Below are positions 1 to 56,139 of a stretch of 64,000 nucleotides of DNA, in pieces. Position numbers and translations under genes: made by a program. The DNA lies in the IMG/VR virus record IMGVR_UViG_3300005965_000002, positions 62,001 to 126,000 of that record; one strand, written 5' to 3'. Under the pieces are notes generated by a model. The model saw only the letters and a list, made by a program, of their open reading frames with translations, searched no databases and was not told the DNA's origin. Position 1 is the first letter of the stretch. The number at the start of each line of letters is the position of its first letter.

Positions 1-2987
1 GGTATCCTTCGACCGATACCGAAAGCTTTTTCGTGTATCTTTAAGGTTATAGGTGCCTGATTTCTTTTAAATTCGTTTCTTCTAACCATACGACCAATCT
101 GGTGGTAGTCGCTTGCACTCATTTGATTTTGTACCCGCAGTATCTCTGCCCAGTCTTCCCTATATGCTTCTCTTCCTTCAATAAATACCTTTAGTCTCGC
201 ATCTAGAAGAGGATAAGGGGGCAAATTATCAGTATCCTCCTGTCCGGGAGCTAGCTCAGCGGAAGGAGCCTTATTAATGATAGACTCCGGTATTAATTCT
301 TTATTATGAAATTCATTATAGTACCTGGCAAGCTCATAGACTTCCATCTTATAAAGATCACTTAAAGGGGCCAGGCCCCCATTCATGTCCCCGTATATTG
401 TGCAATTATGCGTTTTTACGCCATTTACTGTGTATTCATGGTCTTTTTCTACTGTGAAATCGAACATTTCAACTTCTGTTTCCACAGTTTCTAATTTTTT
501 AATAGCGGCGTAGTATGTCTTACTCTTAATTCTATCTTCCAAAGCAACCGTGATATCACTTTTATTTTTAATTGTATCAAGAAATTTTTTAAGAATACTT
601 CTTCCAATCCACTTACTATTTTTATTTAAGTGCCTTCGAATAGTCCCATTTACCTTCCAATGTGTGTTGTCCTTGATGTGTGATAATTCACAGTGTGTTA
701 TAGGAACAACATCATAGCTGGTTTTTATTTTTTTTGTGTTTTTTGTGTTATTATATAGTCTATTAGCTATACTTTTCTTCAGGATTTTAAAATTTAACAA
801 TTTTTCTGATTCTATTGCCGGTATATACACTTCGTGTAAGTTTTTCCTGGACCTAATATAGGAAACTACCCCCAAATTCAACAAAATTAGATGTAACTTT
901 TCTACTAATTTATAGCTAACACTATGGTATAGGATTTCTGACGTATTTTTGTTACCGTTGCTAGTACTATCTAAAAAAACACCTTCAATGAAAGGTTTTA
1001 CAAGATTTAGCGGGGCTCTCATAATGCACGCCGGTACATCTTTATTATGGGAACCATGTTCAATTCCTAAATGTCTTAAAAAACTGTTAAACTGAACACT
1101 ACATATTTCTATAAAAAAGCAACCTCTTTGGTCTTTTTTTGTAACTTTATACGAGCTTTCTTTTAGCCTTATGCTCTTAAAAAACATTACACAGAAATCA
1201 GAAACATACTTTTTAGAAGTACGTATTCTATAGATACTATCATTTATCCCGGAATAAGAGCCGTCAGCAACACAGATACCTATAAATTTAGATAGATTTT
1301 CATTCAAGTGAGATGGAAAATTAATATCTTGGGATATATAGTCAAATTCTTTTTTTTTGTAAGAAAACGTTATGTCGGTACTTCTGCCCCATATGTTTTC
1401 ACCAAAACTTACTATAGACATGTCTCCTACTTTTAGATTTTTAGCCTCTATAAATTCTTCTTTTCCATTTTTGTGTATCTTTATTTTGTGGTCTTCCGAT
1501 ATCTTTATTATATCCCCAAGTATGTTAGTAATTTTGATAAATCTATTTTTAACATTCCTAAATGAGTGCGTAACAGGCATGTCCTTGATAGAATAGGAAT
1601 TTTTTTCGTCAAAAACGCTACGAGCGCTAATTATGCCATTATCCGTAAATATGTAACTATCTCCATGGACACAATAACCCACGGACATCTCACTTTTGTT
1701 TCCTGTGGAAACTAGTAGATACCCAAATTGGTTAGAAAAAGCCATCAAAAGGAGCCCTCTTATACGGGCTTGCATGTTTTGCCTAGTCAAATCTGCGTCT
1801 GGAAGGTCGCCGACAGCGAAAAGAAAATCAGTGAAAACTTTTTCAAATATCCCTTTGATAGGTAGATTCTTTAGCTCTACTCCCAAGTTACTGCATAGCT
1901 TCTCAGAGTCCGTCACACTTCCTATACTAGAATACTCTGATGGCATTGTTACCGCAAAAACTTTGTCCGGACCAATAGCATCAGCGGCCATAGCTATTGC
2001 AACAGCGCTATCTATTCCTCCTGAGGATCCTATTACGATCCCTTTAAAGCACCCAAGTTTAGAAAAATAGTCATGGATACCATTTTTTATCTGTTCGTAA
2101 AAGAATTTTCCAGGGTTATCTTTGTTAATGGGACGCCTGTCATCCTTAGAAAGAAAATCATCTTGTACGGGGATCCCACCGACAAAAACAGATTCTACAC
2201 ATTGTTCGGAATAACTACCTGCGCGTAAGCAGATGTTTCCATTCTGATCTGTTACAAAGCTGTTGCCGTCGAACACTATGGAATCGTTAGCACCTACTTG
2301 GTTAACGTAAACTATGGGAATACCGTACTTCTTGGCGTTATCAGAAACTATTCTTTCTCTGACCCTACGCTTGTTGATCACTGAAGGAGAGGCGTTAATG
2401 CTGATAATAAGGTCGGCGTTTGCTTTGAAGAGATCTTCTACAGGTTTTTTTGAATAAGATTTATTCTCGAACCAAATATCTTCACAGATCAGTAACCCTA
2501 TACGATTACCATTAAAATTAAAGATTCCGGTTTCATTACCCGGTTCAAAATAGCGTGCCTCGTCAAACACATCATACGTAGGAAGCAGTTGCTTGCGATA
2601 TCTGTAAACAATCTTTCCACTTTCTATAACAAGCGCGGTATTAAAAAGGTTTTTGCCTTTACCTTTATTCTCCTCTATAGCTCCTATTATAATTATACCA
2701 GGAAATGTTTTTACCTCTGATAGTACTCTACTTAGTTCGATTTCATGGTCATGAAAAAAAGAAAAGAAGTCCAGAAGATCAAGGGGAGGATATCCTGCAA
2801 GAGCAAGTTCTGAAAAAACTATACAGTGGCTTTGATCGAAACTTTTATATTTGTGTATGTACTCTTCTATTTTTTGGACATAGCTAATGATCTTGTCCGC
2901 ATTACCTTTTAAATCTCCAACTATAAAATTGAGTTGGGCCATGTGGACGCTTAGCGACTTTTGACTACGATTAGTTGAGATATTCAT
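1..2987 (-). CDS. nadE: Glutamine-dependent NAD+ synthetase, intein-containing, 3' end beyond window
   Basis: Manual translation (not in ORF track): MNISTNRSQKSLSVHMAQLNFIVGD..ELALAGYPP..KQLLPTYDVFDEARYF (nitrilase-like glutaminase domain), then SGGIDSA, NMQARIR, TGNKSEMSVGY|intein|CTIYGDMNGGLAPL, KAPSAELAPGQED. ATG at 2987 overlaps the end of pncB; alternative ATG at 2942. Confidence 0.95.
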   Translation of the reverse strand, partial: MNISTNRSQKSLSVHMAQLNFIVGDLKGNADKIISYVQKIEEYIHKYKSFDQSHCIVFSELALAGYPPLDLLDFFSFFHDHEIELSRVLSEVKTFPGIIIIGAIEENKGKGKNLFNTALVIESGKIVYRYRKQLLPTYDVFDEARYFEPGNETGIFNFNGNRIGLLICEDIWFENKSYSKKPVEDLFKANADLIISINASPSVINKRRVRERIVSDNAKKYGIPIVYVNQVGANDSIVFDGNSFVTDQNGNICLRAGSYSEQCVESVFVGGIPVQDDFLSKDDRRPINKDNPGKFFYEQIKNGIHDYFSKLGCFKGIVIGSSGGIDSAVAIAMAADAIGPDKVFAVTMPSEYSSIGSVTDSEKLCSNLGVELKNLPIKGIFEKVFTDFLFAVGDLPDADLTRQNMQARIRGLLLMAFSNQFGYLLVSTGNKSEMSVGYCVHGDSYIFTDNGIISARSVFDEKNSYSIKDMPVTHSFRNVKNRFIKITNILGDIIKISEDHKIKIHKNGKEEFIEAKNLKVGDMSIVSFGENIWGRSTDITFSYKKKEFDYISQDINFPSHLNENLSKFIGICVADGSYSGINDSIYRIRTSKKYVSDFCVMFFKSIRLKESSYKVTKKDQRGCFFIEICSVQFNSFLRHLGIEHGSHNKDVPACIMRAPLNLVKPFIEGVFLDSTSNGNKNTSEILYHSVSYKLVEKLHLILLNLGVVSYIRSRKNLHEVYIPAIESEKLLNFKILKKSIANRLYNNTKNTKKIKTSYDVVPITHCELSHIKDNTHWKVNGTIRRHLNKNSKWIGRSILKKFLDTIKNKSDITVALEDRIKSKTYYAAIKKLETVETEVEMFDFTVEKDHEYTVNGVKTHNCTIYGDMNGGLAPLSDLYKMEVYELARYYNEFHNKELIPESIINKAPSAELAPGQEDTDNLPPYPLLDARLKVFIEGREAYREDWAEILRVQNQMSASDYHQIGRMVRRNEFKRNQAPITLKIHEKAFGIGRRI
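405..1673 (-). mobile_element. Intein (423 aa) with LAGLIDADG-type endonuclease in NadE
   Basis: Starts CVHGDSYIFT, ends GVKTHN, +1 residue Cys. Removal restores GY-CTIYGD. Internal KFIGICVADG and a degenerate FIEGVFLDS block. Confidence 0.9.
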
Positions 2988-4587
2988 TTTTACCAACGCA
3001 GTGAATGTTCAAGATATGATTAGGATTCTTTCTTTTTCTTTTTATATCTCTGGTAATTACTGTCATCAGATTTTGCTCATACTGAGTATCTTCACACATG
3101 CTTTTTGCCGGGTTATTAGATATCTTGGCGACTGGCTGCAGTTCCTCATAATTTCTGCCACACTCTACCATTTTAATTACAAGCTGTAAGGCTTTTGGTC
3201 CGATGTCGTTTGTAAGGTTAGTCCCAACACCGAAAGCTACGCGAATGCGCCCGCTGAAGTACTTAGCTAGACGAATAACGGTGGGTATATCTAACCCATC
3301 ACTGAAAACTAAGGTTTTCGTCCGGGGATCTATACCAAGATGCTTATAGTGGTCAATTAGCCTGTCTCCCCAAAGAAATGGATTCCCACTATCATGTCGA
3401 GCACCATCAAAAAGTTTGGCAAAATATCTGTCAAAATCAGCGAGGAATTTTTCATCTCCGTAAGTATCAGAAAGAACTATCCCGAGGTCCCCTCGGTACT
3501 CTTTAGCCCAGCTATCCATAACAAACTGCTGCGCGTCAGAAAGCCGGGGACCCAAAGCTTGACCTGCCTGGAAGAGCTCATGAGCCATTGTCCCGATGGG
3601 CTTAAGGTCGTAAAACATAGAAAGCATGACGTTACTGGTACCAGACAATACACCAGCTTCTGCCATTGTACTAACTACTTCTTCATGCCACTCACCACTA
3701 AAGCATCTTCGGGTGCCGAAATCTGATATGATTAATTTCTGTCCTGTTTCGGACTCATATTTTTTAACCATCTGTATCTTAGCTTGGAGTCGTTCCCGGC
3801 CTTCATCTAAGTCGGTATTTTTGTGCAGTGCCCGTGTGTAGCATTCATGTACGATTTTAAGTATTTTTACTTCAAAAGGTATCGTATGAAGCCAGGGCCC
3901 CCGAATGACAATATCGAGTTTTCCGTTTTTCTCTTTTACAGTCACGTACTTTCTGCGTAGATAAAACATACGCAAGAAATCTACGTAATCAGGGGAAAGA
4001 AATTTACATTTCTGTTCAATAAAATTAAGTTCTTCTTCTGTATAAGACAAGTTACATATATGGTCAATCTGCTTTTCTATTTCTTTTTTAAAAGGAAGTA
4101 GATCTACTCCATCGGTACGGCATTTAAAACGCGCCTTCATAACTGCTCTCGAACAGTTATGAAGTATATATTGTTGCATGGAGAGCTTATAGAGATCGTC
4201 ATCTGTCATATATTGGATTACATAGGGATCCCCGTTTTCATCCTTCTTGGCAGAATCATTATATATCTTAGACATAAAAGTGCCTTGGCTGTCACTTTCC
4301 GAGACACAAGTCATGGAAATAAATTCAGCCTCAGGATTGGCTTTTTTGATTTCAGGCATGATTTCAGTTTCCGGATCGGAAACTGGATTTTCGGTTTTAA
4401 CAACGAATGTGTCGATTACCATGCCTTCATGCTTATCAAGTACTTCTTGTATGTGCTCGCTTACGTTTTCAATATCTTCAGACACATTATCTCTAAGCAA
4501 GCTTTTCAGCGAATTGACCAATATATTATGGTCTCTCGTTGCAAAGCCCGAACGGGGCCTGATCCAACAGTCTACTAAGTACCTCAC
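2971..4587 (-). CDS. pncB: Nicotinate phosphoribosyltransferase with ~115-aa unknown N-terminal extension
   Basis: DLYK, DFGTRR, GTSN, GTMAHE (phospho-His), DTY, RHDSG, FSDGL and FGVGTNL motifs. Confidence 0.93.
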   Translation of the reverse strand: MRYLVDCWIRPRSGFATRDHNILVNSLKSLLRDNVSEDIENVSEHIQEVLDKHEGMVIDTFVVKTENPVSDPETEIMPEIKKANPEAEFISMTCVSESDSQGTFMSKIYNDSAKKDENGDPYVIQYMTDDDLYKLSMQQYILHNCSRAVMKARFKCRTDGVDLLPFKKEIEKQIDHICNLSYTEEELNFIEQKCKFLSPDYVDFLRMFYLRRKYVTVKEKNGKLDIVIRGPWLHTIPFEVKILKIVHECYTRALHKNTDLDEGRERLQAKIQMVKKYESETGQKLIISDFGTRRCFSGEWHEEVVSTMAEAGVLSGTSNVMLSMFYDLKPIGTMAHELFQAGQALGPRLSDAQQFVMDSWAKEYRGDLGIVLSDTYGDEKFLADFDRYFAKLFDGARHDSGNPFLWGDRLIDHYKHLGIDPRTKTLVFSDGLDIPTVIRLAKYFSGRIRVAFGVGTNLTNDIGPKALQLVIKMVECGRNYEELQPVAKISNNPAKSMCEDTQYEQNLMTVITRDIKRKRKNPNHILNIHCVGKNEYLN

Positions 4588-33549: not shown

Positions 33550-34563
33550 ATGTATTTCAAAGCCATTAAAGGCCATGGGGAAAATATTGCCCTGTTTAAA
33601 AAATGGGTGGTAGAAAACTCATTTGAAGGTGTTTATCTTTTTACAGGACCTAAAGGGGTAGGGAAATTTACAACGGCTCGCCAGCTCTGTAAATACATCC
33701 TGTGTACCGGAGTAAAAGATGATACCTGTCGCTGTGGAAGCTGTAAAATTTTTCCAGGCACCCCTGATTATCTGGAGATTAGTAAGGGTGGAGGAGAAAC
33801 TATTAAAGTTGCTGACGCAGAAAGCATAGACAATTTTACTAGTCTTCTTCCTTATAAAAGTAGAAAAAGGGTTGTGTTGATTGATGATGCAGAGAATCTA
33901 AACGTAAAAGCGGCTAATCGTCTACTAAAGGTGTTAGAAGATATAAAGAGCCATATGATTGTCATTTTGGTTTCTAGTAACCCGCATCTAATTCTCCCAA
34001 CTATTAAATCACGCACAACAGAAATTCCTTTCAGTCGCTTATCTGTGGAGGAATCTTTAGAGGTATTGAAGGATAGGGGCATGTCCGTTGGAAAAATTAA
34101 AGATATGTCCAAGGCTATACCATATTTGAGGGAAAGCATGCCTCGGGCAGGTCTTAAGTACTATGAGTATTATAAGTATGTACCCTCCTTCCTGGAGCTA
34201 ATGGTTTCTTCCAGTGAAGACGAAGTCTTGAGTGCTATTAAGAGTATAGAAGAAAATGAAAACATTTCTTATTTTGCCGAAATGTTAGTTGAGTACCTAT
34301 CTGACATGCTAAGGATAATGTACGATGCCGAGAACAACATACATTTTGATGCAAAGTTTAAGGAAATAGAGAAATTGACATTTTCTTGGAACGACGATCT
34401 ATGTATAGCATTTGCTAACCGCCTGCGAAACGCAATATCTGATTATGATCGAGGAATAAATTTGAAGTTGTATAATAGAGTACGCACAGCAGTATCCTGG
34501 GTTTACATTCTTCTCCAGAATCATTTGGGTAGGAAACAAAGTAAAGCCAAGGTTGCTCCATAG
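33550..34563 (+). CDS. holB: Clamp loader delta-prime subunit
   Basis: GPKGVGK, C-rich Zn module, IDDAENLN..AANRLLK.LE, LPTIKSR. Confidence 0.88.
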   Translation: MYFKAIKGHGENIALFKKWVVENSFEGVYLFTGPKGVGKFTTARQLCKYILCTGVKDDTCRCGSCKIFPGTPDYLEISKGGGETIKVADAESIDNFTSLLPYKSRKRVVLIDDAENLNVKAANRLLKVLEDIKSHMIVILVSSNPHLILPTIKSRTTEIPFSRLSVEESLEVLKDRGMSVGKIKDMSKAIPYLRESMPRAGLKYYEYYKYVPSFLELMVSSSEDEVLSAIKSIEENENISYFAEMLVEYLSDMLRIMYDAENNIHFDAKFKEIEKLTFSWNDDLCIAFANRLRNAISDYDRGINLKLYNRVRTAVSWVYILLQNHLGRKQSKAKVAP

Positions 34564-34571
34564 AGGAAATA

Positions 34572-35480
34572 ATGCCTAATAAGTATTTGATTACTGCTAA
34601 AGATTCATATTTTGCTCGTGAAAAAATTTTTCAGATAGCTGAAAAACACGATATACCGGATCCAAAAATTTTTGTAGAGCACAAGGACTTCATAGAGGAA
34701 GCCTACCAGGGTGACCTTTTTAATGATAGTCAAAAAGCCCTGGCTTTAATACCTCTTACAACAGAATCCCTGCCCCACATACTTAGTCTTTGTAACCAGA
34801 CTACTTCTGATGTTCTAATTCTAGTAGATTACGGTGGTCTATCCAAGAATCGAAACTACACAAAGATCAAAGCTCTTTGTGAGATTGTCCCGGTTAAAAA
34901 GTTTAGTGATAAAGAATCGGTTTCCTGGACAGCGGCTACCCTTAAAAACCACGCCTTTTCTTATGAGCCGGGCGTACCCGAGTTAGTAGCTGCTTATAAA
35001 GGACCTGATGCTCAAGGTATAATGAATGAGATAAAAAAGTTGGATTTGTATTTAGACGATAAAAAAGTTACAAAAAAAGTTTGTAAAACAATCATTTCCC
35101 GTGTAGGAGAGGGTAAAATGTTTGATTTTACAGAGCACTTCTTTAGAAAGCACAAAAAGGAAGTTATTGAGGAGTTTAATTCATTTTCAGAATCTTCATA
35201 TATAGGTTTGGTGCATCTACTGATTTCTCAGTGTGACCGGATATATAAGGTAGCTGTTTATAGAGAGCAAAAGATGTCAGCGGAAGAAATAGCAGAACTG
35301 ATAGGTATACCCCCTTTTATCATAAAGACTAAGATTTTTACAGCGCTGAATGTTTTTAATAAGGTAAAATTATTAAAGTTAATGGATATGTTTAATGAGC
35401 TAGATAAGCTCTTAAGATCATCTCCATATAATAAGAGATTGATGTTCGAGTCCTTTTTGCTGAAATCCTTTAACTTGTAA
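34572..35480 (+). CDS. holA: Clamp loader delta subunit
   Basis: NEIKKLDLY, FDF, GIPPFIIK, L.ELDKLLRS pattern of HolA. Confidence 0.78.
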   Translation: MPNKYLITAKDSYFAREKIFQIAEKHDIPDPKIFVEHKDFIEEAYQGDLFNDSQKALALIPLTTESLPHILSLCNQTTSDVLILVDYGGLSKNRNYTKIKALCEIVPVKKFSDKESVSWTAATLKNHAFSYEPGVPELVAAYKGPDAQGIMNEIKKLDLYLDDKKVTKKVCKTIISRVGEGKMFDFTEHFFRKHKKEVIEEFNSFSESSYIGLVHLLISQCDRIYKVAVYREQKMSAEEIAELIGIPPFIIKTKIFTALNVFNKVKLLKLMDMFNELDKLLRSSPYNKRLMFESFLLKSFNL

Positions 35481-35551: not shown

Positions 35552-35872
35552 ATGAAAACGGGTGATCGTGGGGTTATAATAGAGATGGATCTGGACCAAC
35601 AAAGGTTAAAAGAATTGGTTAGTGAAGCTCTTAGGATAATTTACGAATTTATAGAAGGTGAGTATGTATACACAAAAGAAGATATAATGGGACAACTTGA
35701 AAGAATTTTGTCCACGAACCGTGTATCAGTTCCTTTTGTTTTAAATATAGGAAGTAAAAAAATTCCTGACTTGGAGCTTAAAGTAGAGCCTAGGCGAAAA
35801 AGATTGCTCTGCCACACTAAGTTTAGAAAAAAGATAGCTGTAGTTAATCAGATTTTAAGGACAATGAAATGA
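35552..35872 (+). CDS. Hypothetical protein
   Basis: ORF downstream of a copy of the late-type motif. Confidence 0.5.
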   Translation: MKTGDRGVIIEMDLDQQRLKELVSEALRIIYEFIEGEYVYTKEDIMGQLERILSTNRVSVPFVLNIGSKKIPDLELKVEPRRKRLLCHTKFRKKIAVVNQILRTMK

Positions 35873-36351
35873 TAGCCGAACCTTTATTTATTAGGTTTGT
35901 GAATGGTAAGATATCATCTCCAGGTATTATCGAATCCTTTAGGAATAATGCTGTAAATGATAAGACAAGAGATATAATAGAAGCAGCTACTGCTTCCCCT
36001 CCTAATTTAAGCGTTTTTAGAAAAGATTTTAGGAATTTATTAACAGATGTTATTGATAAAGGTATTACCCAGGATTTCATTAACTACGTAAATAGCTATA
36101 TGAAGCCCTCCATTGAGGAATATGTGCAGGGTTCGAGTGGTGGAAGGGCTGGTGAAAATAGGACGATAGGCATAAAGGATGAGGACACACCTTGGGTAGA
36201 GGCGGTAGTCTGTTATAATTTGTGCCTCTACATAAAAGTTGAGGGGATTGAGAAGATTAAACAGTGTGCTGTATGTAAAAAATTTTTCTGCCATAAAACT
36301 AAGTATGCCAAGTATTGTAATGATTCATGTAAGAGTAGAGGTAGAGAATGA
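35869..36351 (+). CDS. Protein with C-terminal CGNR-like Zn finger
   Basis: IKQCAVCKKFF..AKYCNDSC. Confidence 0.6.
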   Translation: MIAEPLFIRFVNGKISSPGIIESFRNNAVNDKTRDIIEAATASPPNLSVFRKDFRNLLTDVIDKGITQDFINYVNSYMKPSIEEYVQGSSGGRAGENRTIGIKDEDTPWVEAVVCYNLCLYIKVEGIEKIKQCAVCKKFFCHKTKYAKYCNDSCKSRGRE

Positions 36352-36872
36352 GGAAGAACCTCGTATTAGCTTTTGGCTTGCAGAATACTTACATGCATCA
36401 GGATGGCGCTATATCTTTAGGAGATAAAGCAGAAGTTTATAGATTCAGGATTAAAGATTATATACAGTCTTTAAATCAGGAAGTGAATAAGTTATACTTA
36501 TTAAGAGAAGTACACGCTCCTAATGATACTTTTTTCTGCCGCGACCGTACTCATTCTTTAGTCGGGAGTAAAGATGTAGAGGTCCCTGAAGTATTTAAAT
36601 CATATTTTAAATTTATCATCAATACGACACGATATAACGCTTTATATAAGACACCATTAGAATCAGAGATATTTAAAATTGACCCGGAAAAAATAGTATT
36701 GATAGGATTTGAAACCCATACTAATATCCTTTTTACTGCTGAGGAGTTAAGAAATAGAGGATATAATGTAACGGTAATTGAGCCTCTAGCAGCATCCAGA
36801 GATTTGACCTTGCATGCCTCAGCGATATCTCTATTAAGTGACACACTGTCTGTTTCTATTAGTCAGGAGTAA
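36348..36872 (+). CDS. Isochorismatase/nicotinamidase-fold protein lacking the catalytic triad
   Basis: LQNTY..DGAI, E.H, H..VGS, RYNALYKT.LE, GFET..IL.TA..RGY.V.V. Asp, Lys and Cys are replaced by Gly, Thr and Asn. Confidence 0.8.
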   Translation: MRKNLVLAFGLQNTYMHQDGAISLGDKAEVYRFRIKDYIQSLNQEVNKLYLLREVHAPNDTFFCRDRTHSLVGSKDVEVPEVFKSYFKFIINTTRYNALYKTPLESEIFKIDPEKIVLIGFETHTNILFTAEELRNRGYNVTVIEPLAASRDLTLHASAISLLSDTLSVSISQE

Positions 36873-36875
36873 GTT

Positions 36876-37193
36876 ATGGTAGCAATATTTCAGTACAAAA
36901 TACAGTGTCCCTATTGCGATACAGAAATATCTTTAGTTGCGGAAGAATCGAATCCAATAATTTTTCCCTGCAAAGGATGTAGCAATCATATTGTAATAGA
37001 GGGTAATATCGTGTACAATGTTCCATCTAATGTAGCACAGAGAGTAATGAAAAGGGTTAAAGTCAAACAGTGTGGCCAGGTAGTGAAGTCAAAACTTAAC
37101 CCTAAACATGTCATAACTCAGAAAGAGATAGATGACTTGCACGAAATGCTTGAAAATAATAGTACTATAGAGGATTTTTTAAAACAACTTTAA
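36876..37193 (+). CDS. Zn-ribbon protein
   Basis: CPYC..CKGC. Confidence 0.6.
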   Translation: MVAIFQYKIQCPYCDTEISLVAEESNPIIFPCKGCSNHIVIEGNIVYNVPSNVAQRVMKRVKVKQCGQVVKSKLNPKHVITQKEIDDLHEMLENNSTIEDFLKQL

Positions 37194-37206
37194 AAAATAG
37201 TACATA

Positions 37207-37659
37207 ATGTATATATTAAGGTATATGGAAGATAAAGAACTTGACGGAAAACTGGTATACCTTACAATCCATTTTGAAAATTGGTTAAAACAGGTAAATC
37301 CTGCATTTAACGTCCCTATGGCTAATAGGTTAGCTAAGGTGATTAAAGTCTTCGATTGGGATACAGAAGAGGGTCAGATACTGCTAGCCGAGAGGGAAAA
37401 GACTGGTAAGTGGAAAAATCTAGATCCCAAAGACTTTAAATTTGTCCTTAAGGTATACTACCCCGAATTAGTCTTAAAAGGCAAAGTCAGAGGCTTCTCC
37501 GCCCAGGAGCTTGCTTGTAGGTATTACCCGGGCAAGGATATAACTATGTTTGAGCCGCTGCCAGATTCCCTAGTAAAAGAATTAGTGCGACAAGAAAAAA
37601 ACATACTGAAGGTAGAAAAAAGAAATGTATCTGGATCCGTTCGTAAGAAGAGCAAATGA
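37207..37659 (+). CDS. Hypothetical protein
   Basis: ORF in operon; start may be the downstream MEDKE. Confidence 0.55.
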   Translation: MYILRYMEDKELDGKLVYLTIHFENWLKQVNPAFNVPMANRLAKVIKVFDWDTEEGQILLAEREKTGKWKNLDPKDFKFVLKVYYPELVLKGKVRGFSAQELACRYYPGKDITMFEPLPDSLVKELVRQEKNILKVEKRNVSGSVRKKSK

Positions 37660-38317
37660 AGCTATTTTTCGATACGAGGAACCTTTAGAATATCTAAACG
37701 ACAGAGGAATAACAAAAGACGAAATAAGAAAATATTCTTTAGGTTACTTGAATATTGCCAATATAAAAGATGATGAAACCGAAGAATACAAAAGATTTAA
37801 AGAACAGACCTACAATTTTAGGGCCCTCGAAAAAAAGTTACTGATTCCCTTAAAAAATATTCTCGGTAAAGTGAATGGTGTCATTACCAGGGACTTGAAA
37901 GAAAAACGATACAAACAGTTTTTCTTGAAAGAAGCAAAGGATATAGGCACCTTTTTTGGATTGTATGAGGCTCTGCCGGAAATATGTAAGCAGAGGAAAG
38001 TCTTCGTTCACGAGGGAGCGATAGACGCGATTTCTTTTGCGAAAGTTTTTCCAAATAGTATTTCTGTACTAACTTCTCGAATTAACGAATGCCAATACGA
38101 GACATTGCGTTTTTTCGCTGATACGATTATCTTAGTTTTCGATGAGGATAGCCCGGGTAAGCACGGCGTAGATACAATGTATAAACTGTTTGGTAAGAAA
38201 CATCTTTATACAGTTTCGATTGGGTTTAACGATTCAAATGCATGCTTACAAAGAATGGGGCTCGAATCTTTTAAAAGATATATGAGGAACAAAGTCCCTC
38301 TTTTATTAAGAAATTAA
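37625..38317 (+). CDS. DnaG-type primase catalytic core (TOPRIM)
   Basis: YLNDRGIT, IPLKN..G, VHEGAIDAIS, FDEDSPG; no Zn-binding domain. Confidence 0.82.
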   Translation: MYLDPFVRRANEAIFRYEEPLEYLNDRGITKDEIRKYSLGYLNIANIKDDETEEYKRFKEQTYNFRALEKKLLIPLKNILGKVNGVITRDLKEKRYKQFFLKEAKDIGTFFGLYEALPEICKQRKVFVHEGAIDAISFAKVFPNSISVLTSRINECQYETLRFFADTIILVFDEDSPGKHGVDTMYKLFGKKHLYTVSIGFNDSNACLQRMGLESFKRYMRNKVPLLLRN

Positions 38318-38343: not shown

Positions 38344-39699
38344 ATGTCGGGTACAAAGTATCGTCCATTAGATTTTAATAGCGTATTGGGATTGGATTCT
38401 ATCAAGCTTATTCTCCAAAGAATAATTGATAGAAAGGAATTCGATCCCGCTTACTTATTCAGCGGTGACTTTTCTACTGGAAAAACTACCCTGGGAAGAA
38501 TATTCGTTCGGAGTGTCTTCTGCACCAACCGTAAAAAGGATATGTCCCCATGTAATGAGTGCTCGTCTTGTAAAGACTTTTTATCAGAGCGCCACCCCGG
38601 TTATATTGAGATTGATGCAGCTAATAATGGATCAAAGGAAAAAATAAAAGAGATCAGAGAAAAGCTTTCGTACGAGTCTGTAACAAGCAGGATATTTATT
38701 TTATTTGATGAATGTCATAATATTAGTAAAGAAGGAAACGACGCATTACTTAAGGAGTTAGAGAAAGACAGGGATAACGTACATTTTATTTTTTGCACCA
38801 CAGAATTAGATAAGATGCCCCCGCCTTTAAGATCGAGATGCATACAATTTGAAATACACCAGCCTACTGAAGAAAATATACGTAAAAAGTTAGAGTTTAT
38901 TTGTAAGAAGGAAAATATTAATTATGAGCTTGAGGCTTTAAGATTAATAGTTCAGTCCACCGGCAGGCATTACCGTGACTCTGAGAATAAGCTTAGACAA
39001 GTATCTTTCTTAGGGGATATATCTCTTGAGAATACTAAAAAAGTAACGTGTGTGTACGAAGAAGAAATAGCAAGGATGTTAATTTATCTTTCAGATGATG
39101 TAAACATTGCTATGGAAATTTGTGATTACTTAGTAGAAAGAATGAATGTAAAAAATATCTATCAGACAATACTTAGACTCATAGTAGATGGTATTAAGCT
39201 GCTGCAGGGTGACATGGAAGTTGATAACTCAGCTATGTCGTATATGAATGATTTAGTACGGCAATACGGAGATTCGTTATATGAAATGCTAGATTTCATA
39301 TTATCAAAAGGAAGATTTACAGATTTAACATTTCTCCAATCCGACCTCTTATTAATGCACTATAAATTCCTCAGATGTCAATTCGATTCAAAGGCACTCG
39401 CGCCACAAGCCGCATCAGTATCAGCACCAAATAAAGATCAAGATCAAAAAATAGTATCAAGAAATAAGATGGAAAAATTAAAACAAGCAGGATCCTCTTG
39501 GGAACGTGCTGAGATGATGCGGAAATTACGTAATGAAAAAAATAAGACAAAGAAAGATGATAGAGTAGAAGAAGCCGTATCAAAGGCATGGGGTCCTGAA
39601 GTGGATTCTTTTGGGACAGAGTCGGTGTTTAAAAGGGAGATATCTCCTACTGACTTTATGAAAAAAATTGGAGGAGCTCTGGATGATAACAAGATCTAG
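38344..39699 (+). CDS. dnaX: Clamp loader gamma/tau subunit
   Basis: KYRP..F, G..STGKTT, PCNECSSC, EIDAA, DECH, LLKELE, SRC, G.YRD. Confidence 0.92.
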   Translation: MSGTKYRPLDFNSVLGLDSIKLILQRIIDRKEFDPAYLFSGDFSTGKTTLGRIFVRSVFCTNRKKDMSPCNECSSCKDFLSERHPGYIEIDAANNGSKEKIKEIREKLSYESVTSRIFILFDECHNISKEGNDALLKELEKDRDNVHFIFCTTELDKMPPPLRSRCIQFEIHQPTEENIRKKLEFICKKENINYELEALRLIVQSTGRHYRDSENKLRQVSFLGDISLENTKKVTCVYEEEIARMLIYLSDDVNIAMEICDYLVERMNVKNIYQTILRLIVDGIKLLQGDMEVDNSAMSYMNDLVRQYGDSLYEMLDFILSKGRFTDLTFLQSDLLLMHYKFLRCQFDSKALAPQAASVSAPNKDQDQKIVSRNKMEKLKQAGSSWERAEMMRKLRNEKNKTKKDDRVEEAVSKAWGPEVDSFGTESVFKREISPTDFMKKIGGALDDNKI

Positions 39700-40243
39700 T
39701 AGAGCCCCTAAGAATAAGGGTATGGATCTTTCACATAAGTACAAAGGACCCGGAAATTGGTTAATAATACGAATTAAAGAAGGTTGTGAATTATCTGAGA
39801 ATTTTGATTTAATAGAGAGAGAATTAAATCTAATCTTAGAAAGCGATACTGAATATTTTATCCCAGCGTATGTGGAAAAGGTTGAAGATCAGTATATACC
39901 TATAGTTCTTTTCGAGGGGTATGTTTTTGTGAGGTGTGCTCATTGCTCATGTGATTCATCAAGTATATCATGCCTCGATGGGCCATTAGTAGTTAATAAG
40001 AGTATACAGTACGCTAGAAATAGGGACATTAATAATTTTAAGGACAAGCTTAATAAGCAGATACAGGATATGATCCCTAAGAAAGGGCAACTAATAGTTC
40101 CTAAAGTCGGTACCTTTAAAAACTTGGAGGGTACCGTAATTTCTGTGAATCGTAAAAAAAGAACCGCTAAGGCGATATTTAAGCAGGCATCAAGAGTCGT
40201 ATCAGCCTATATAAACGTAATAAATCTTGAAATTATAGATTAG
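39668..40243 (+). CDS. NusG/RfaH-like transcription factor (NGN+KOW)
   Basis: YFIP..LFEGYVFV (NGN), KGQ.I....GTFKNLEGTVISVN (KOW); true start is likely 39683 or 39722. Confidence 0.78.
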   Translation: MEELWMITRSSRAPKNKGMDLSHKYKGPGNWLIIRIKEGCELSENFDLIERELNLILESDTEYFIPAYVEKVEDQYIPIVLFEGYVFVRCAHCSCDSSSISCLDGPLVVNKSIQYARNRDINNFKDKLNKQIQDMIPKKGQLIVPKVGTFKNLEGTVISVNRKKRTAKAIFKQASRVVSAYINVINLEIID

Positions 40244-40250
40244 GAAAGAC

Positions 40251-41198
40251 ATGAAAGCTTACTTTATTATTGATGGAAATAACTTGGCTCACCGGGCACA
40301 CAACAGCCATTTTGACTTGAAGAAGGCAAATGGGGATCCTTCCGGTATGGTTTACGGATTTATGAGAATATTGATCTCTTTAAAAAAGAAGTACAGAGCT
40401 TTCAAATTTATTGTTGTGTGGGATAATAGGCCGGATAAAAAGTATGAGCTAAAACCCGATTATAAAGCTGGTAGATCTAGACTACCCACAAAGGTATTTG
40501 ACCAAGTAGGTGAAATAAAGTTGATATTAAGTAGGTGCGGGGTGGATCAGTACGAAAAGAGAGGGGAAGAGGCAGATGATGTAATAGCAACTTTGGTGCG
40601 CAGGTTTAAAGACGAAGGTTCTAAGGTATACGTATATAGTAACGATAAGGATCTCCTACAGCTAGTTGAGGATGGAAAAGTTACAGTATACAGGCCTAAG
40701 GTAGGAAATACCCCGGAAAAGTTTTTTGATGAAGAAGCTGTGAAGGAGAAATTTAACGTATCTCCAAAAAAATTAGCTCTATATCGTAGCTTCGACGGGG
40801 ATTCAAGTGATAATATATCAGGAGTTCCAAGGGTACGTAGGAAACTAATAGCAAGTATTGTGTCTAAGCAATCATCTCTCGCGGATATATTTAATAGTAT
40901 TCACGATGATGCGGACATAAAGAAAATGTTAAGCGAAAAAGAATACGAAGCTATAAATAAGCATCTGGAAACCGCTGCAATAAATCTTAAGATAATTGAG
41001 CTGAATCAGTTTTTAGAAGATATAGATAAGACAGAGGCTCAGTATTCGGTGGAAGAGGTATCAAAGATACTTAGTGACTACGAAATTAAATCTATAGACG
41101 CAGAAAATGTCATAGATTTATTTAAGACATCTGTGAATATTAAATTCACTGAGCCTAAGCAAGCTATCAAGCTTGAAACCTATTCCCTCTTTGATTAA
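40251..41198 (+). CDS. 5'-3' exonuclease / flap endonuclease (PolA N-terminal-like)
   Basis: IDGNN..R, YKAGR, EADDVIATL, SNDKDLLQL, GDSSDNISGV. Confidence 0.93.
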   Translation: MKAYFIIDGNNLAHRAHNSHFDLKKANGDPSGMVYGFMRILISLKKKYRAFKFIVVWDNRPDKKYELKPDYKAGRSRLPTKVFDQVGEIKLILSRCGVDQYEKRGEEADDVIATLVRRFKDEGSKVYVYSNDKDLLQLVEDGKVTVYRPKVGNTPEKFFDEEAVKEKFNVSPKKLALYRSFDGDSSDNISGVPRVRRKLIASIVSKQSSLADIFNSIHDDADIKKMLSEKEYEAINKHLETAAINLKIIELNQFLEDIDKTEAQYSVEEVSKILSDYEIKSIDAENVIDLFKTSVNIKFTEPKQAIKLETYSLFD

Positions 41199-41211
41199 CA
41201 GGGGAGGACAT

Positions 41212-41838
41212 ATGAAGCATAGCGTATGTCGTAGTATGGATCCTTTTGAGATACAGAGCAGATATTCATCTGAAGATTATTCTTTCTTTAGCTTTAAAGA
41301 AAGCTCATTTTGTTTAGATGATTTTGAACCGTTTATTGATAAGCTGCCTCGTAGAGAAAAAGATCTAATTGAAATGTACTACAAAAGGCAAAAAAAGCAG
41401 AAAGAAATAGCGGAGTTTTTTAATGTGACCCAGGGCGCTGTTTCTCATAGGCTCTCTAGAGCAAGAAAAAGATTAAAATTTTTGAGGGATATGCCCAAAG
41501 CTACAGGTAATCTCGAAGAAGATTTATCCACACATTTTACTGATTTTGAGATTGATATCATAAAATATATGATAGAGACTACGTGTCAGTCTAAAACTGC
41601 TGATATACTCAACAAGAAGCACGGGCTAAAAGGTAAAGAGAAGATGACGCAAGTTAAAGTAAGACACAAGTTTGATAGAGCAATATCAAAGATAAATAAC
41701 CTTAAGAAGAAAAACCCGGAACTCAATGTATACTTTGAACTTACGAAGTATGTACAGAAAAATCCGTATATGCTGCACGAGGTAATTTTGCCGCATTTCG
41801 ATAGAGGCTATAAGGTAAACTATAAAGGTGTTTTCTAA
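41212..41838 (+). CDS. Sigma-70 region-4-like HTH protein (tandem HTH)
   Basis: LPRREKDLIEMYY..QKEIAEFFNVTQGAVSHRLSRA; a second similar HTH follows; GGAGG RBS before ATG 41212. Confidence 0.75.
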   Translation: MKHSVCRSMDPFEIQSRYSSEDYSFFSFKESSFCLDDFEPFIDKLPRREKDLIEMYYKRQKKQKEIAEFFNVTQGAVSHRLSRARKRLKFLRDMPKATGNLEEDLSTHFTDFEIDIIKYMIETTCQSKTADILNKKHGLKGKEKMTQVKVRHKFDRAISKINNLKKKNPELNVYFELTKYVQKNPYMLHEVILPHFDRGYKVNYKGVF

Positions 41839-45573: not shown

Positions 45574-46260
45574 ATGCCAGATGATTCAATGGATCTCAAC
45601 TTAGACGAGATTCTTGAAACTGCTGAATTTGAGGATGAAAAAAATCCTATTGATATAGTAGAGAGAGAAAAGGGCGAAACAGAAGATATTAAGGATCTTG
45701 AATCCGAGATAGGTAAGGTACAAGAAAGCCATGATAAGGGTGAAGAGAGAGAATTAATAAACGAGCCCCAGGATCTTTTAGCTATTAATGTAAAAGGGCA
45801 CAGCCAGCTACAGCAGCTTATAGAAGACCCTTTAGAGAATGATGATCTATATCAGGCAATAGATAATGACGACCCCGCTCCGGCATTACTAAGGAGCGCC
45901 ATGAAGGAGTATGCAGAAGAGATAGCATACTTAAAGGCATGGAGGAAACATAATTATAAGTTAGACGCCGATATGACATCCGAGATATCTGATAAAAGGA
46001 TGAAAGCATTATTTAATCTTGTAAAGGCCGTACTTGAAAGAGAAAAGATAGCCAGTAAGCAAAGTAAAGGTAAGATAGATTTTCACGGAGAAAATTTTGC
46101 AAAGGTTTTTCAGTTTTTTCTCCAAGAGGTTCAGGAGACTTTTAAGACTGTAAATATACCAGAGCAGTATCAAAAGATCTTCTTTCCGCAGTTAGCAAAA
46201 CGACTGGACGGTTTTGAGAAAAAGGCGGAGAGGATATACTACGGGAAATCTCCTAGATGA
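45574..46260 (+). CDS. Putative terminase small subunit
   Basis: Helical protein overlapping the start of terL; positional inference only. Confidence 0.4.
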   Translation: MPDDSMDLNLDEILETAEFEDEKNPIDIVEREKGETEDIKDLESEIGKVQESHDKGEERELINEPQDLLAINVKGHSQLQQLIEDPLENDDLYQAIDNDDPAPALLRSAMKEYAEEIAYLKAWRKHNYKLDADMTSEISDKRMKALFNLVKAVLEREKIASKQSKGKIDFHGENFAKVFQFFLQEVQETFKTVNIPEQYQKIFFPQLAKRLDGFEKKAERIYYGKSPR

Positions 46261-55600: not shown

Positions 55601-56139
55601 GATTTGTTGAGAAAGATGAGTTTGGAAGAGAGCGGTTGATTTATCCTAAGCTGTCCTTCACGAGACTCGCTATTAAGGATAATGATGTTTATTTTGACCA
55701 GGTAAATCAGCTATATCAGAAGGGTTCGGTATCAGTAGATGTTATCTTGGATATGCTTGGTATTGATCCTGACGCTACAAAAGAAAAAATTGAAGCGGAT
55801 CTATTCACTGTTAATGACGCCTCCTTTAACGCTTTTATGCAGTCCCTATACACCGCTGTCGGATCTGACTTCTTCCAAAAGTATGATGTTGAAGGGGCTC
55901 TGGCTAAGTATCTCAGGATACCGGAGCTTGTGCAGCCTGCCGGAGAAGAAGAAGGAGGTTTAGGCGGAGCAGGTCTGGGAGGCGGACTAGGCGGAGGAGA
56001 AGCTCGGTTTGCTTCAGAAGATACTTCTGATATGACAGAGAGAAGGAAGGCGGCATTGCAGAAATTGATGAAGATAGCTATCAAAAACCCAGATAAACTG
56101 GATAAGCTAGCTCAAATTTTCGACCGTAAGAGAATATAA
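52696..56139 (+). CDS. Portal protein, intein-containing
   Basis: FVGSAIDLHS..P, EYWLMGN, HLARK..Y..G.SIL pattern; ~650 aa after splicing; lies between terL and the protease. Confidence 0.8.
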   Translation: MAGRKTGNKGTTPKTTVTKTASEDLTVQEVRGVKPTMKLTDKEKQVRALKKYATTSFGFGSRVSSMYGNTMLSNEGNFYSPQLSTDFLEKPQNLRERRAWYRHFYNSNEFVGSAIDLHSTLPLSKVKLEKPKCKNPKMAQYVYTFFEDMCQDMRLFKVLTEISHEYWLMGNCLGKNSKLRCVDSYKKAVDVSVGDYVLTHEGRFRRVKNKFSRYSEKITNIEMWKTYKKLDLTEEHPVEVYRNGKFEFIEVKDLTEDDYIRVTWVKDIDDVKTINYLESFKNLDITESGYTKETNIKRKRAKKSHECRLKMLFWLSNLTEPVIKSRDDIAFDLNVERKTLDNVLTQLNKEFGKSRYSRRIGASNYQKGSRVEWLPFKYSDVDSCYEIKRIENFTTPHTVDIDEDFCYLLGYWIGDGTISRDNSRKNIWGRAIWNIVFGDSSDKQKEKIYRILQEKIGIQCIKEWDSYRDCGDGKVSKLSTVKIKSNPAFVEWWANNFGETTKGDNRKKIPLWVSKLPLNKLYALIAGLVDSDGCISNGVCDISLSSESLISSIQEILLKCNIVPNINKKEGTKGTGVLNNNGKIYSDVYKVVFKARDFSSFVGNYSIKGAKYSDIKQEKPYLSKYIITDNGDIAFKVKKITESEYNDMVFNFEVEEDHTFQVEGFSTHNCFPFAEDHDPYDGDEQTVAHLKEEGRQRAEYLWENFKVRDKDPNYKGWRKIIILPPDQVRVRNVLLSDQESIIEFMPDPETKKLIMGEGLGRVYGYSESMQISEMEKNISVPEKMRDQIREGGSIPLDTDPYTGSHVYHLARKKSQYETLGVSILERCINTLLFADKIRQAQTSIASRHMTPIRIVWAEELNEADVEALREQVDLALVDPDYSIITNYQVNWEEMGSNGRLLELSTEYEHIENSLFAGLNVTREILTGEGSYSGSRITLEVMNRIYLLFRDSIQEYIENYLFKPVAHKKGFVEKDEFGRERLIYPKLSFTRLAIKDNDVYFDQVNQLYQKGSVSVDVILDMLGIDPDATKEKIEADLFTVNDASFNAFMQSLYTAVGSDFFQKYDVEGALAKYLRIPELVQPAGEEEGGLGGAGLGGGLGGGEARFASEDTSDMTERRKAALQKLMKIAIKNPDKLDKLAQIFDRKRI
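53209..54702 (+). mobile_element. LAGLIDADG intein (498 aa) in portal
   Basis: LMGN|CLGKNSKL..LTEEHP..STHN|CFPF; LLGYWIGDG and LIAGLVDSDG. Confidence 0.93.

What the first reader, a model, noticed from the sequence alone, without database searches (positions are those of the whole stretch)
36348..36872. Nicotinamidase-like protein with the whole Asp-Lys-Cys triad replaced
Seen: DxQND reads GLQNT, KxxYSAF reads TTRYNAL and TxxCV reads THTNI, while possible metal ligands (E-x-H and a later H) remain. It therefore cannot be the PncA that feeds PncB by the canonical mechanism. Inference: a nicotinamide or nicotinate binder/sensor, or an inhibitor of a host homolog.
Basis: partly seen in the sequence, partly recalled or inferred. 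Interest (0 to 1): 0.65.

Follow-up and report, generated by a model that had tools for sequence, protein, structure and literature searches.

The report
Triad-less nicotinamidase relative in huge phages
A huge phage from salt-lake mats carries a well-conserved relative of the vitamin-B3 enzyme nicotinamidase that has lost all three catalytic residues and always sits between two zinc-finger genes in the DNA-replication gene block, so it is not the enzyme its automatic label suggests and probably has a new, non-amidase job.

Summary
Window 36348-36872 (+) is a real 174-aa gene of the isochorismatase/nicotinamidase fold. Pfam PF00857 scores E 1.6e-12, the AF2 model has pLDDT 93.9, and TM is 0.87 to Firmicute PncAs.

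Profile alignment puts G10, T93 and N126 at the Asp, Lys and Cys positions. This is a family trait, not a one-off. In 128 relatives (34-99% identical) the Asp and Cys positions are never D or C, and they vary freely. New residues around the old pocket are nearly invariant: R53, E54, D60, E122, H124, R135 and E145. Triad-less representatives form one clade (SH-aLRT 99).

The gene is not linked to the phage's PncB/NadE genes, which lie 32 kb away (53 kb in a complete 469.6-kb relative). In every contig long enough to show its neighbours, it lies in the replication/transcription block between a CGNR-type zinc-finger gene and a zinc-ribbon gene, upstream of the primase core and clamp loader. It is as conserved as those replisome proteins.

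Phage G, by contrast, has a canonical PncA inside a PncA-PncB-NadD-NadE cluster.

Best reading: a re-purposed, non-amidase ligand-sensing or regulatory subunit. The mechanism is inferred, not shown.

The parts
36348..36872 (+). Triad-less PncA-like protein, 174 aa (isochorismatase fold). Its ATG overlaps the stop of the upstream gene (ATGA), and a GAGG lies 7-8 nt upstream.
36375..36377 (+). Codon of G10, at the position of the catalytic Asp. In the family it is G 81, S 26, C 10, N 8, K 3, never D.
36624..36626 (+). Codon of T93, at the position of the catalytic Lys. In the family it is T 81, V 13, S 10, K 10, I 9, A 5.
36723..36725 (+). Codon of N126, at the position of the nucleophilic Cys. 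In the family it is N 66, T 20, S 16, I 6, F 6, M 4, A 4, L 2, never C.
36507..36554 (+). Remnant of the metal-binding motif, E54-x-H56 ... D60 ... H69. E54 is kept in 128/128, D60 in 125/128, H56 in 115/128 and H69 in 75/128. The fourth ligand is replaced by R65.
36711..36764 (+). Most conserved stretch of the family, E122-T-H ... L-F-T-A-E-E-L-R-N ... Y139. E122 takes the place of the oxyanion-hole/cis-peptide Ala or Cys. H124 takes the place of the Asp/Asn of T-D-x-C.
35869..36351 (+). Upstream partner gene, 160 aa, with a C-terminal C-x2-C ... Y-C-x2-x-C zinc finger. It resembles ABATE/zf-CGNR putative regulators. It is conserved upstream of the PncA-like gene in all loci with context.
36876..37193 (+). 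Downstream partner gene, 105 aa, a zinc ribbon with C11, C14, C32 and C35 invariant. It directly abuts or overlaps the PncA-like gene in nearly every locus examined (not called in L020), and a GGAG lies just before the stop of the PncA-like gene.
37207..37659 (+). Conserved 150-aa protein of unknown function. Its end overlaps the start of the primase core.
37625..38317 (+). DnaG-type primase catalytic core (DNAG_N + Toprim) without its own zinc-binding domain.
33550..35480 (+). Two clamp-loader subunits: delta-prime-like (33550-34563) and delta-like (34572-35480).
35552..35872 (+). Conserved 106-aa protein of unknown function, part of the syntenic block.
38344..41838 (+). Rest of the block: clamp-loader gamma/tau-like ATPase (38344-39699), NusG-like protein (39668-40243), 5'-3' exonuclease (40251-41198) and sigma-70 region-4 protein (41173-41838).
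3..4587 (-). Context only, the phage's NAD genes 32 kb away on the other strand: glutamine-dependent NAD synthetase NadE with an intein (3-2996, runs off the window) and PncB-type nicotinate phosphoribosyltransferase (2971-4587).

Best explanation
The gene encodes a re-purposed descendant of a Firmicute-type nicotinamidase that no longer hydrolyses nicotinamide by the Cys-thioester mechanism.

It belongs to one old, monophyletic, strongly conserved clade found in huge phages. In that clade the three catalytic positions became free to vary. A new set of polar residues at the same crevice became fixed: R53, E54, D60, R95, E122, T123 and H124. So did a surface helix, L-F-T-A-E-E-L-R-N.

It works as part of a fixed three-gene unit: CGNR-type zinc-finger protein, then PncA-like protein, then zinc-ribbon protein. 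That unit is embedded in the replication/transcription block with clamp loader, primase core, NusG-like protein, 5'-3' exonuclease and sigma-like protein.

My most likely mechanism is that it is the small-molecule-sensing, non-catalytic subunit of this unit. It would bind a pyridine or nucleotide-type ligand in the remodelled pocket and pass that state to its zinc-finger partners or the replisome. A dead-Nudix sensor such as NrtR reports ADP-ribose in the same way.

Shown: the fold, loss of the triad, family-wide conservation, single origin, synteny, and lack of linkage to PncB/NadE. Inferred: ligand binding, the identity of the ligand, and the partnership with the neighbours.
For: Fold and ancestry:
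- PF00857 E 1.6e-12.
- AF2 pLDDT 93.9, pTM 0.90.
- The top Foldseek PDB hits are all nicotinamidases, TM 0.86-0.87.
- The family profile matches PncA structures at E 5e-15.

Loss of catalysis:
- G10/T93/N126 sit at the Asp/Lys/Cys positions.
- In 128 members the Asp and Cys positions are never D or C, and they are variable.

Still under strong selection:
- Members are 34-99% identical, with 39 positions at 90% conservation or more.
- The protein is 41-59% identical between the window and its relatives. That equals or exceeds the primase (37-58%), the tau-like clamp loader (30-60%) and the exonuclease (34-57%) in the same loci.

Remodelled pocket: family-specific near-invariant R53, E54, E122 and H124 flank the old catalytic positions at the C-terminal edge of the sheet.

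One origin: 21 of 24 triad-less representatives form one split, SH-aLRT 99.

Context:
- Same gene order in loci L003-L008, L012-L014 and L016, including a high-GC relative and a distant subfamily.
- The zinc-finger / PncA-like / zinc-ribbon trio is kept even on short contigs of distant subfamilies.
- Start and stop overlaps indicate translational coupling.
- The upstream protein resembles ABATE/zf-CGNR putative regulators.

Not part of NAD salvage by position:
- PncB and NadE are 32 kb away on the other strand.
- In the complete 469,617-bp relative, NadD-like, NadE and PncB cluster at 152-159 kb and the PncA-like gene sits at 212 kb.
- Phage G shows what a real phage PncA looks like: an intact D/K/C triad inside NUDIX-PncA-PncB-NadD-NadE.
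Against: - No ligand, metal or partner was demonstrated.
- The co-folding test with the zinc-ribbon neighbour gave no verdict.
'Pocket' versus 'surface' placement of the conserved residues rests on alignment to known PncA structures and on the model's secondary structure, not on measured distances.
- Conserved charged residues in the old site could equally be a new catalytic centre, or buried salt bridges.
- Gene order in phages is only a weak guide to function.
- No fusion of this domain to a DNA-binding or replisome domain was found.
Confidence: 0.4

Rival explanations
1. It is a purely structural accessory subunit of the phage replisome, associated with the primase or clamp loader. The old enzyme fold would serve only as a protein-protein interaction scaffold and bind no ligand. 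From memory, and as a lead only: the chi and psi subunits of the E. coli clamp loader are alpha/beta proteins with vestigial nucleotide sites.
For: - Constant position between clamp-loader and primase genes.
- Conservation equal to that of replisome proteins.
- A helix that is nearly invariant on all faces, L128-N136, suggests an interface.
- The primase core lacks its own zinc-binding domain, while a zinc ribbon is encoded right after this gene.
Against: - The strongest family-specific conservation (R53, E54, D60, E122, H124) lies at the classical ligand crevice, which a scaffold would not need.
- Co-folding with the zinc ribbon gave no support, though that is also no evidence against binding.
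- No fusions to replisome proteins were found.
Confidence: 0.25
2. It is an active enzyme with new chemistry. A Glu/His (E122, H124) centre with carboxylates E54 and D60, possibly holding a metal, would replace the Asp-Lys-Cys triad and act on an unknown substrate linked to DNA or nucleotide metabolism.
For: - The catalytic positions vary, while immediately adjacent positions gained near-invariant acid/base residues.
- E54 and D60 keep the acidic part of the old metal motif.
- Conserved Arg and Thr residues (R34, R53, R95, T102, T123) would suit a phosphorylated substrate.
Against: - To my knowledge, no member of the isochorismatase superfamily works without both the Asp and the Lys.
- H56 is Arg in 9% of members, H124 is Gln/Asn/Ser in 7%, and H69 is lost in 41%. 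A fixed His-based metal site is therefore unlikely.
- In wider triad-less relatives position 54 can be L, M or H, and position 122 can be R.
Confidence: 0.2
3. Either it is a nicotinamide or nicotinate sponge or sensor that uses the canonical binding mode, or it is a decoy that inactivates the host's PncA by mixed oligomers.
For: - E54, H56 and H69 are present in this protein.
- Aromatic Y15, F62, F63 and Y96 are kept.
- The phage invests in NAD metabolism: PncB, NadE and an NAD-dependent ligase.
Against: - The third His is kept in only 59% of members, and the fourth ligand is lost.
- The aromatic wall (W in phage G gp275) is a variable polar residue.
- The oxyanion-hole residue is Glu.
- Blocking host PncA would starve the phage's own PncB of nicotinate.
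- The gene is a core syntenic gene, not a variable counter-defence gene.
Confidence: 0.1
4. It is an ordinary nicotinamidase after all, the first step of nicotinamide to nicotinate to NaMN for the phage's PncB. Alternatively, it is a decaying gene without function.
For: - The sources' automatic annotation calls relatives 'nicotinamidase-related amidase'.
- The phage has PncB and NadE.
Against: - All three catalytic residues are absent here, and the Asp and Cys are absent in all 128 relatives.
- The triad is described as totally conserved in nicotinamidases (PMC5531466).
- Decay is excluded by intact frames and 39 positions at 90% conservation or more across 34-99% identity.
Confidence: 0.03

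Closest known systems
Firmicute-type nicotinamidases/pyrazinamidases (PncA): B. subtilis 5ZN8/6A8L, S. pneumoniae 3O90-3O94, S. mutans 3S2S, S. aureus 6KUA
   Same: - Same short (~180 aa) isochorismatase-like alpha/beta fold, TM 0.86-0.87, with full-length profile alignment at E 5e-15 to 6e-12.
- Shared G20, G25, D60, T102, G120, T123, T-A of the helix after strand 4, G-Y, and H156.
- The acidic residue and first His of the metal motif are kept.
   Different: - Only 17-20% identity.
- The Asp, Lys and Cys positions are replaced by G, T and N.
- The metal Asp is Glu, and the fourth ligand Glu is Arg.
- The oxyanion-hole Ala/Cys is Glu, and the Asp/Asn of T-D-x-C is His.
- The aromatic wall residue is lost.
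- The gene is not next to NAD genes.
Bacillus phage G gp275 (canonical phage PncA)
   Same: It is a PncA-fold protein of a ~0.5-Mb phage, of the same short Firmicute type. It aligns over 158 residues.
   Different: - gp275 keeps D, K, C, the D-x-H ... H motif and the Trp wall.
- It lies in a NUDIX-PncA-PncB-NadD-NadE cluster.
- It is 19% identical to the window's protein.
- In the tree it falls among canonical enzymes, not in the triad-less clade.
Isochorismatases proper (EntB/PhzD type) and other cysteine hydrolases of PF00857 (CSHase, RutB, BiuH, TrtA)
   Same: Superfamily membership by Pfam score and by fold.
   Different: The cysteine hydrolases need Asp-Lys-Cys. The vinyl-ether-cleaving isochorismatases lack the Cys but, from established knowledge, keep the Asp and Lys. 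This family lacks all three.
NrtR, a Nudix-derived NAD-regulon repressor that senses ADP-ribose (functional analogy, recalled from memory, not tested)
   Same: It is an enzyme fold of NAD metabolism that lost catalysis, kept a ligand pocket, and acts with a nucleic-acid-binding module.
   Different: It has a different fold. NrtR carries its DNA-binding domain in the same chain. Here the putative nucleic-acid-binding zinc-finger proteins are separate neighbouring genes, and no ligand is known.

Membership tests
Isochorismatase-like superfamily (Pfam PF00857) | Score above the curated Pfam gathering threshold | tested here: met
   48.3 bits against a cut-off of 27, E 1.6e-12. The same holds for all relatives.
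Isochorismatase-like superfamily (Pfam PF00857) | Three-layer alpha/beta/alpha fold with a parallel sheet | tested here: met
   AF2 pLDDT 93.9. 140 PDB matches at E <= 0.001; those listed are isochorismatase-fold hydrolases, best TM 0.87.
Nicotinamidase PncA (EC 3.5.1.19) | Catalytic triad Asp-Lys-Cys, described as totally conserved (PMC5531466) | tested here: not met
   G10, T93 and N126 sit at the aligned positions. The family never has D or C at the first and third positions.
Nicotinamidase PncA (EC 3.5.1.19) | Metal-binding motif of one Asp and two His plus a fourth residue (Firmicutes: DAHxxxDxxHPE) | tested here: inconclusive
   This protein has E54, H56 and H69, and the fourth ligand is R65. 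In the family E54 is kept in 128/128, H56 in 115/128 and H69 in 75/128. Metal content was not measurable here.
Nicotinamidase PncA (EC 3.5.1.19) | Gly followed by the cis-peptide/oxyanion-hole pair (G-V/I-A/C) before T-x-x-C | tested here: not met
   G120 is kept, but the pair reads F121-E122. E122 is 95% conserved in the family. The cis-peptide geometry itself could not be tested.
Nicotinamidase PncA (EC 3.5.1.19) | Aromatic wall of the nicotinamide pocket (W83 of UbNic, Trp in phage G gp275) | tested here: not met
   Position 66 is D here and T/S/D/K/E/Q/G across the family.
Nicotinamidase PncA (EC 3.5.1.19) | Hydrolysis of nicotinamide to nicotinate | not testable with these tools
   Needs an enzyme assay.
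Phage Preiss-Handler / NAD salvage gene cluster (PncA-PncB-NadD-NadE, as in phage G and the 'NAD-jumbo phages' of PMC11662467) | Physical clustering with pncB, nadD and nadE | tested here: not met
   It is 32 kb from PncB/NadE on the other strand, and 53 kb away in the complete relative. Phage G's canonical PncA is clustered.
Isochorismatase proper (EntB/PhzD type) | Catalytic Asp and Lys retained although the Cys is absent (established knowledge) | tested here: not met
   The Asp position is G and the Lys position is T.
Replisome accessory subunit / partner of the flanking zinc-finger proteins | Physical complex with a neighbour-encoded protein | tested here: inconclusive
   Co-folding with the zinc ribbon scored 0.09 against a mark of 0.32, so there is no verdict. 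Conserved adjacency and overlapping stop/start codons are the only support.

The most novel reading that the evidence does not exclude
The triad-less PncA is a metabolite sensor that reads the NAD-breakdown state of the infected cell, for example a nicotinamide, NMN or ADP-ribose-type signal produced when NAD-depleting defences fire or when the NAD-dependent ligase turns over. Through its two zinc-finger partners it would gate the phage's replication/transcription programme. That would make it a phage-encoded pseudoenzyme checkpoint linking NAD status to DNA replication.
Probability: 0.1. Interest if true: 0.8.

Novelty: new variant of a known kind. Interest (0 to 1): 0.55.

Why it matters
Surveys of 'NAD-jumbo phages' count NAD genes by annotation (PMC11662467). 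The sources label this whole clade 'nicotinamidase-related amidase'. It has 330 clusters at E <= 1e-8 and 21 representatives at 50% identity, yet it cannot be a canonical nicotinamidase. Such counts of phage pncA, and inferred pathways that start from nicotinamide, are therefore likely overstated for this phage group.

It is also a clean case of an enzyme fold captured by a virus, stripped of its catalytic triad, and then held under selection as strong as that on replisome proteins. The gene sits at a fixed place between two zinc-finger genes. That points to an unrecognised component of the replication or regulation machinery of ~0.5-Mb phages, and it gives a small, well-folding protein with which to test the idea.

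Tried and rejected
- **Close phage relatives.** Megablast of 15 kb around the gene against GenBank phages found nothing. tblastn of the protein found only ~21-22% identical matches in unannotated Staphylococcus and Listeria 'phage' records. The tau-like clamp loader's best match was 33%, to an uncultured 485-kb phage. There is therefore no cultured close relative.
- **PHROGs.** Only a weak hit to phrog_19305, of unknown function, at E 1.4e-5.
- **Co-folding.** The PncA-like protein with the downstream zinc ribbon scored 0.09 and 0.02 against a mark of 0.32. That is no verdict, and it counts neither for nor against binding.
- **Fusions.** I looked for Rosetta-stone fusions in the length-unrestricted profile search. 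The long hits are tandem isochorismatase domains or a canonical PncA fused to a QRPTase-like domain. None joins the triad-less domain to a replication or DNA-binding domain.
- **NadD in the window's own record.** None was found in the 258-kb, 55%-complete record. This does not show absence from the phage.
- **Literature.** Searches for an isochorismatase-fold phage pseudoenzyme or anti-defence protein found nothing relevant. NARP3 is a PnuC/NadR system and is unrelated.
- **Phage G as a relative.** I considered that the phage G 'PncA-like' protein was a family member. It is a canonical enzyme in a different context.
- **Neighbours.** Context look-ups for three more distant subfamilies gave contigs too short to judge beyond the immediate neighbours. 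Pfam at loose thresholds gave nothing credible for the four small neighbouring proteins.
- **Not run.** I did not run read laying, because no RNA run holds the stretch.

Full report
**What is there**

The window is bases 62001-126000 of a 258,580-bp IMG/VR virus record that CheckV rates 55% complete. Near-identical DNA occurs in hypersaline-lake and microbial-mat metagenomes. A related record of 469,617 bp has direct terminal repeats and is rated complete. This is therefore a ~0.5-Mb phage.

The ORF at 36348-36872 (+) encodes 174 aa. It matches Pfam PF00857 (Isochorismatase) at 48.3 bits against a cut-off of 27. With 35 homologues it folds with mean pLDDT 93.9. Its best structural neighbours in the PDB are all nicotinamidases: B. 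subtilis 6A8L/5ZN8, S. pneumoniae 3O90-94, S. mutans 3S2S and S. aureus 6KUA, at TM 0.86-0.87 and 17-20% identity. 'Nicotinamidase-like' is therefore correct.

**The observation**

Single-sequence and profile alignments to the solved PncAs are full length, at E 5e-15 to 6e-12. They place the residues as follows:

| Catalytic residue | Canonical motif | This protein |
|---|---|---|
| Asp | 'ICIDYTNDF' | G10 |
| Lys | 'KTRYSAF' | T93 |
| Cys | 'CTDICV' | N126 |

The Firmicute metal motif DAHxxxDxxHPE (PMC5531466) reads EVHAPNDTFFCR here. E54 and H56 stand for the Asp and first His. H69 stands for the later His. The fourth ligand Glu is R65.

**It is a family trait**

The word search found 35 relatives. 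A profile search found 330 at E <= 1e-8. In the 128 sequences I aligned, pairwise identity runs from 34 to 99%. The three catalytic positions read:

| Position | Residues seen in 128 members |
|---|---|
| Asp | G 81, S 26, C 10, N 8, K 3 |
| Lys | T 81, V 13, S 10, K 10, I 9, A 5 |
| Cys | N 66, T 20, S 16, I 6, F 6, M 4, A 4, L 2 |

The canonical catalytic positions are thus not merely changed but unconstrained.

Other canonical features are also gone. The third metal His is kept in 75 of 128. The aromatic wall residue (Trp in phage G gp275) is a variable polar residue. The oxyanion-hole Ala/Cys is a 95%-conserved Glu.

In contrast, 39 positions are at least 90% conserved. They include family-specific R34, R53, E54, E122, H124, R135 and E145, and an almost invariant stretch E-T-H ... 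L-F-T-A-E-E-L-R-N.

The exhaustive profile search showed a still wider triad-less group with the same hallmarks: Q12, D60, R95, E122, T123, H/Q124 and E145. Canonical D/K/C enzymes follow only lower in the ranking. In a quick maximum-likelihood tree of 81 full-length representatives, 21 of 24 triad-less sequences, including the window's, form one split with SH-aLRT 99. This points to one ancient loss followed by long retention. The caveat is that the tree came from a short search and is unrooted.

**Context**

The gene is not in the phage's NAD block. NadE (with an intein) and a PncB-type phosphoribosyltransferase lie at window 3-4587 on the minus strand, 32 kb away. In the complete relative a NadD-like gene, NadE and PncB cluster at 152-159 kb. 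The only PF00857 gene there is at 212 kb.

Instead the gene lies in a co-directional block with this order:
1. delta-prime-like and delta-like clamp-loader subunits
2. a 106-aa protein
3. a 160-aa protein with a C-terminal zinc finger
4. the PncA-like gene
5. a 105-aa zinc ribbon
6. a 150-aa protein
7. a DnaG-type primase core lacking its own zinc-binding domain
8. a gamma/tau-like clamp loader
9. a NusG-like protein
10. a 5'-3' exonuclease
11. a sigma-70 region-4 protein

This order recurs in ten loci from other contigs. These include a high-GC relative and a distant subfamily. The trio of zinc finger, PncA-like gene and zinc ribbon is visible even on short contigs of other subfamilies.

The gene's ATG overlaps the upstream stop. 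The downstream gene starts 4 nt after its stop, behind a GGAG.

Between the window and its relatives the protein is 41-59% identical. That is as much as or more than the primase, the tau-like clamp loader and the exonuclease of the same loci. The upstream protein resembles ABATE/zf-CGNR putative regulators in the ESM Atlas, at TM 0.59-0.66.

**Contrast**

Bacillus phage G, also ~0.5 Mb, has a canonical PncA, gp275. It has an intact D, K, C triad, the D-x-H ... H motif and the Trp wall. It lies in a NUDIX-PncA-PncB-NadD-NadE cluster. It is 19% identical to the window's protein and sits among canonical enzymes in the tree. That is what a phage PncA feeding PncB looks like. The window's gene is something else.

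**Mechanism**

What is shown: a PncA-derived fold, no canonical catalysis, strong purifying selection, a single origin, and a fixed place in the replication/transcription block between two zinc-finger genes.

What is inferred: function. I rank the readings as follows.

| Reading | Confidence | Main argument |
|---|---|---|
| (a) Non-catalytic ligand-sensing or regulatory subunit acting with the zinc-finger neighbours | 0.4 | The new invariant polar residues sit exactly at the classical ligand crevice of this fold, while the old catalytic positions drift |
| (b) Ligand-free structural replisome accessory | 0.25 | Constant place among the clamp-loader and primase genes; conserved like them |
| (c) New enzyme built on E122/H124/E54/D60 | 0.2 | H56, H124 and position 54 are not invariant in the wider clade, which argues against a fixed metal-hydrolase centre |
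| (e) Ordinary nicotinamidase or decaying gene | 0.03 | Triad absent; frames intact and conserved |

A link to NAD is still conceivable. The phage encodes PncB, NadE and an NAD-dependent DNA ligase.

**Limits**

- I had no model coordinates, so spatial statements rest on alignment to known structures.
- The only co-folding job gave no verdict.
- No RNA data hold this stretch.
- There is no cultured relative.

**Verdict**

The positive inference about a nicotinamide binder or host inhibitor remains untested and is somewhat weakened.

The finding is a previously undescribed, widespread triad-less branch of the nicotinamidase family, fixed in the replication block of huge phages. I class it as a new variant of a known kind, with moderate to good interest.

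Noticed in passing
window 3-2996 (-), 5986-9519 (+), 52696-56139 (+): Three genes carry inteins: NAD synthetase NadE (Intein_splicing + LAGLIDADG), the ribonucleotide reductase large subunit (intein with an HNH domain), and the portal protein (intein with LAGLIDADG). An intein in a portal protein is unusual.
   Followed up: no
window 4663-5760 (-): A RlaP-family (Pol-beta-type) nucleotidyltransferase lies directly beside PncB and NadE. No NadD-type adenylyltransferase (PF01467) was found in the 258-kb record, although the complete relative has one next to NadE. It could be coincidence, an incomplete record, or a non-orthologous replacement.
   Followed up: partly
window 37625-38317 (+) and 36876-37193 (+): The DnaG-type primase is only the catalytic core (DNAG_N + Toprim, 230 aa) without a zinc-binding domain. 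A separate conserved zinc-ribbon protein is encoded two genes upstream. This may be a split primase.
   Followed up: partly
window 35869-36351 (+): The 160-aa protein has a C-terminal C-x2-C ... Y-C-x3-C finger and resembles ABATE/zf-CGNR putative stress regulators. It is conserved throughout this phage clade.
   Followed up: partly
window 39668-40243 (+) and 41173-41838 (+): A NusG-like protein and a sigma-70 region-4 protein sit inside the replication block, so the block also carries transcription factors.
   Followed up: no
G000:C1:254156-254857 (outside the window; L015): The phage encodes an NAD-dependent DNA ligase in a 678-aa open frame, so its replication consumes NAD.
   Followed up: no
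family members P0003, P0006, P0011 and others; P0080: The sources label the triad-less family 'nicotinamidase-related amidase'. One member is filed under a Candidatus Altiarchaeales MAG on a 41.8-kb contig, probably a phage contig binned into a MAG.
   Followed up: no
L006 (IMGVR_UViG_3300028920_002946, 182,677 bp, classed 'provirus'): This is a high-GC relative with the same gene order. Long spurious antisense ORFs overlap the real genes there, and simple longest-ORF filters discard the PncA-like gene.
   Followed up: yes
window 11213-12115 (-) and 46257-48134 (+), 58685-60253 (+): A DnaJ-like chaperone (J domain + CxxCxGxG) is encoded here. The replication block is followed directly by the packaging/head genes: large terminase, portal and a prohead-protease-like protein.
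   Followed up: no
P0229, P0272, P0217, P0177, P0222 (not in the window): These are proteins with two tandem isochorismatase domains, some with one triad-less domain. They may be independent examples of a catalytically dead domain paired with a live one.
   Followed up: no
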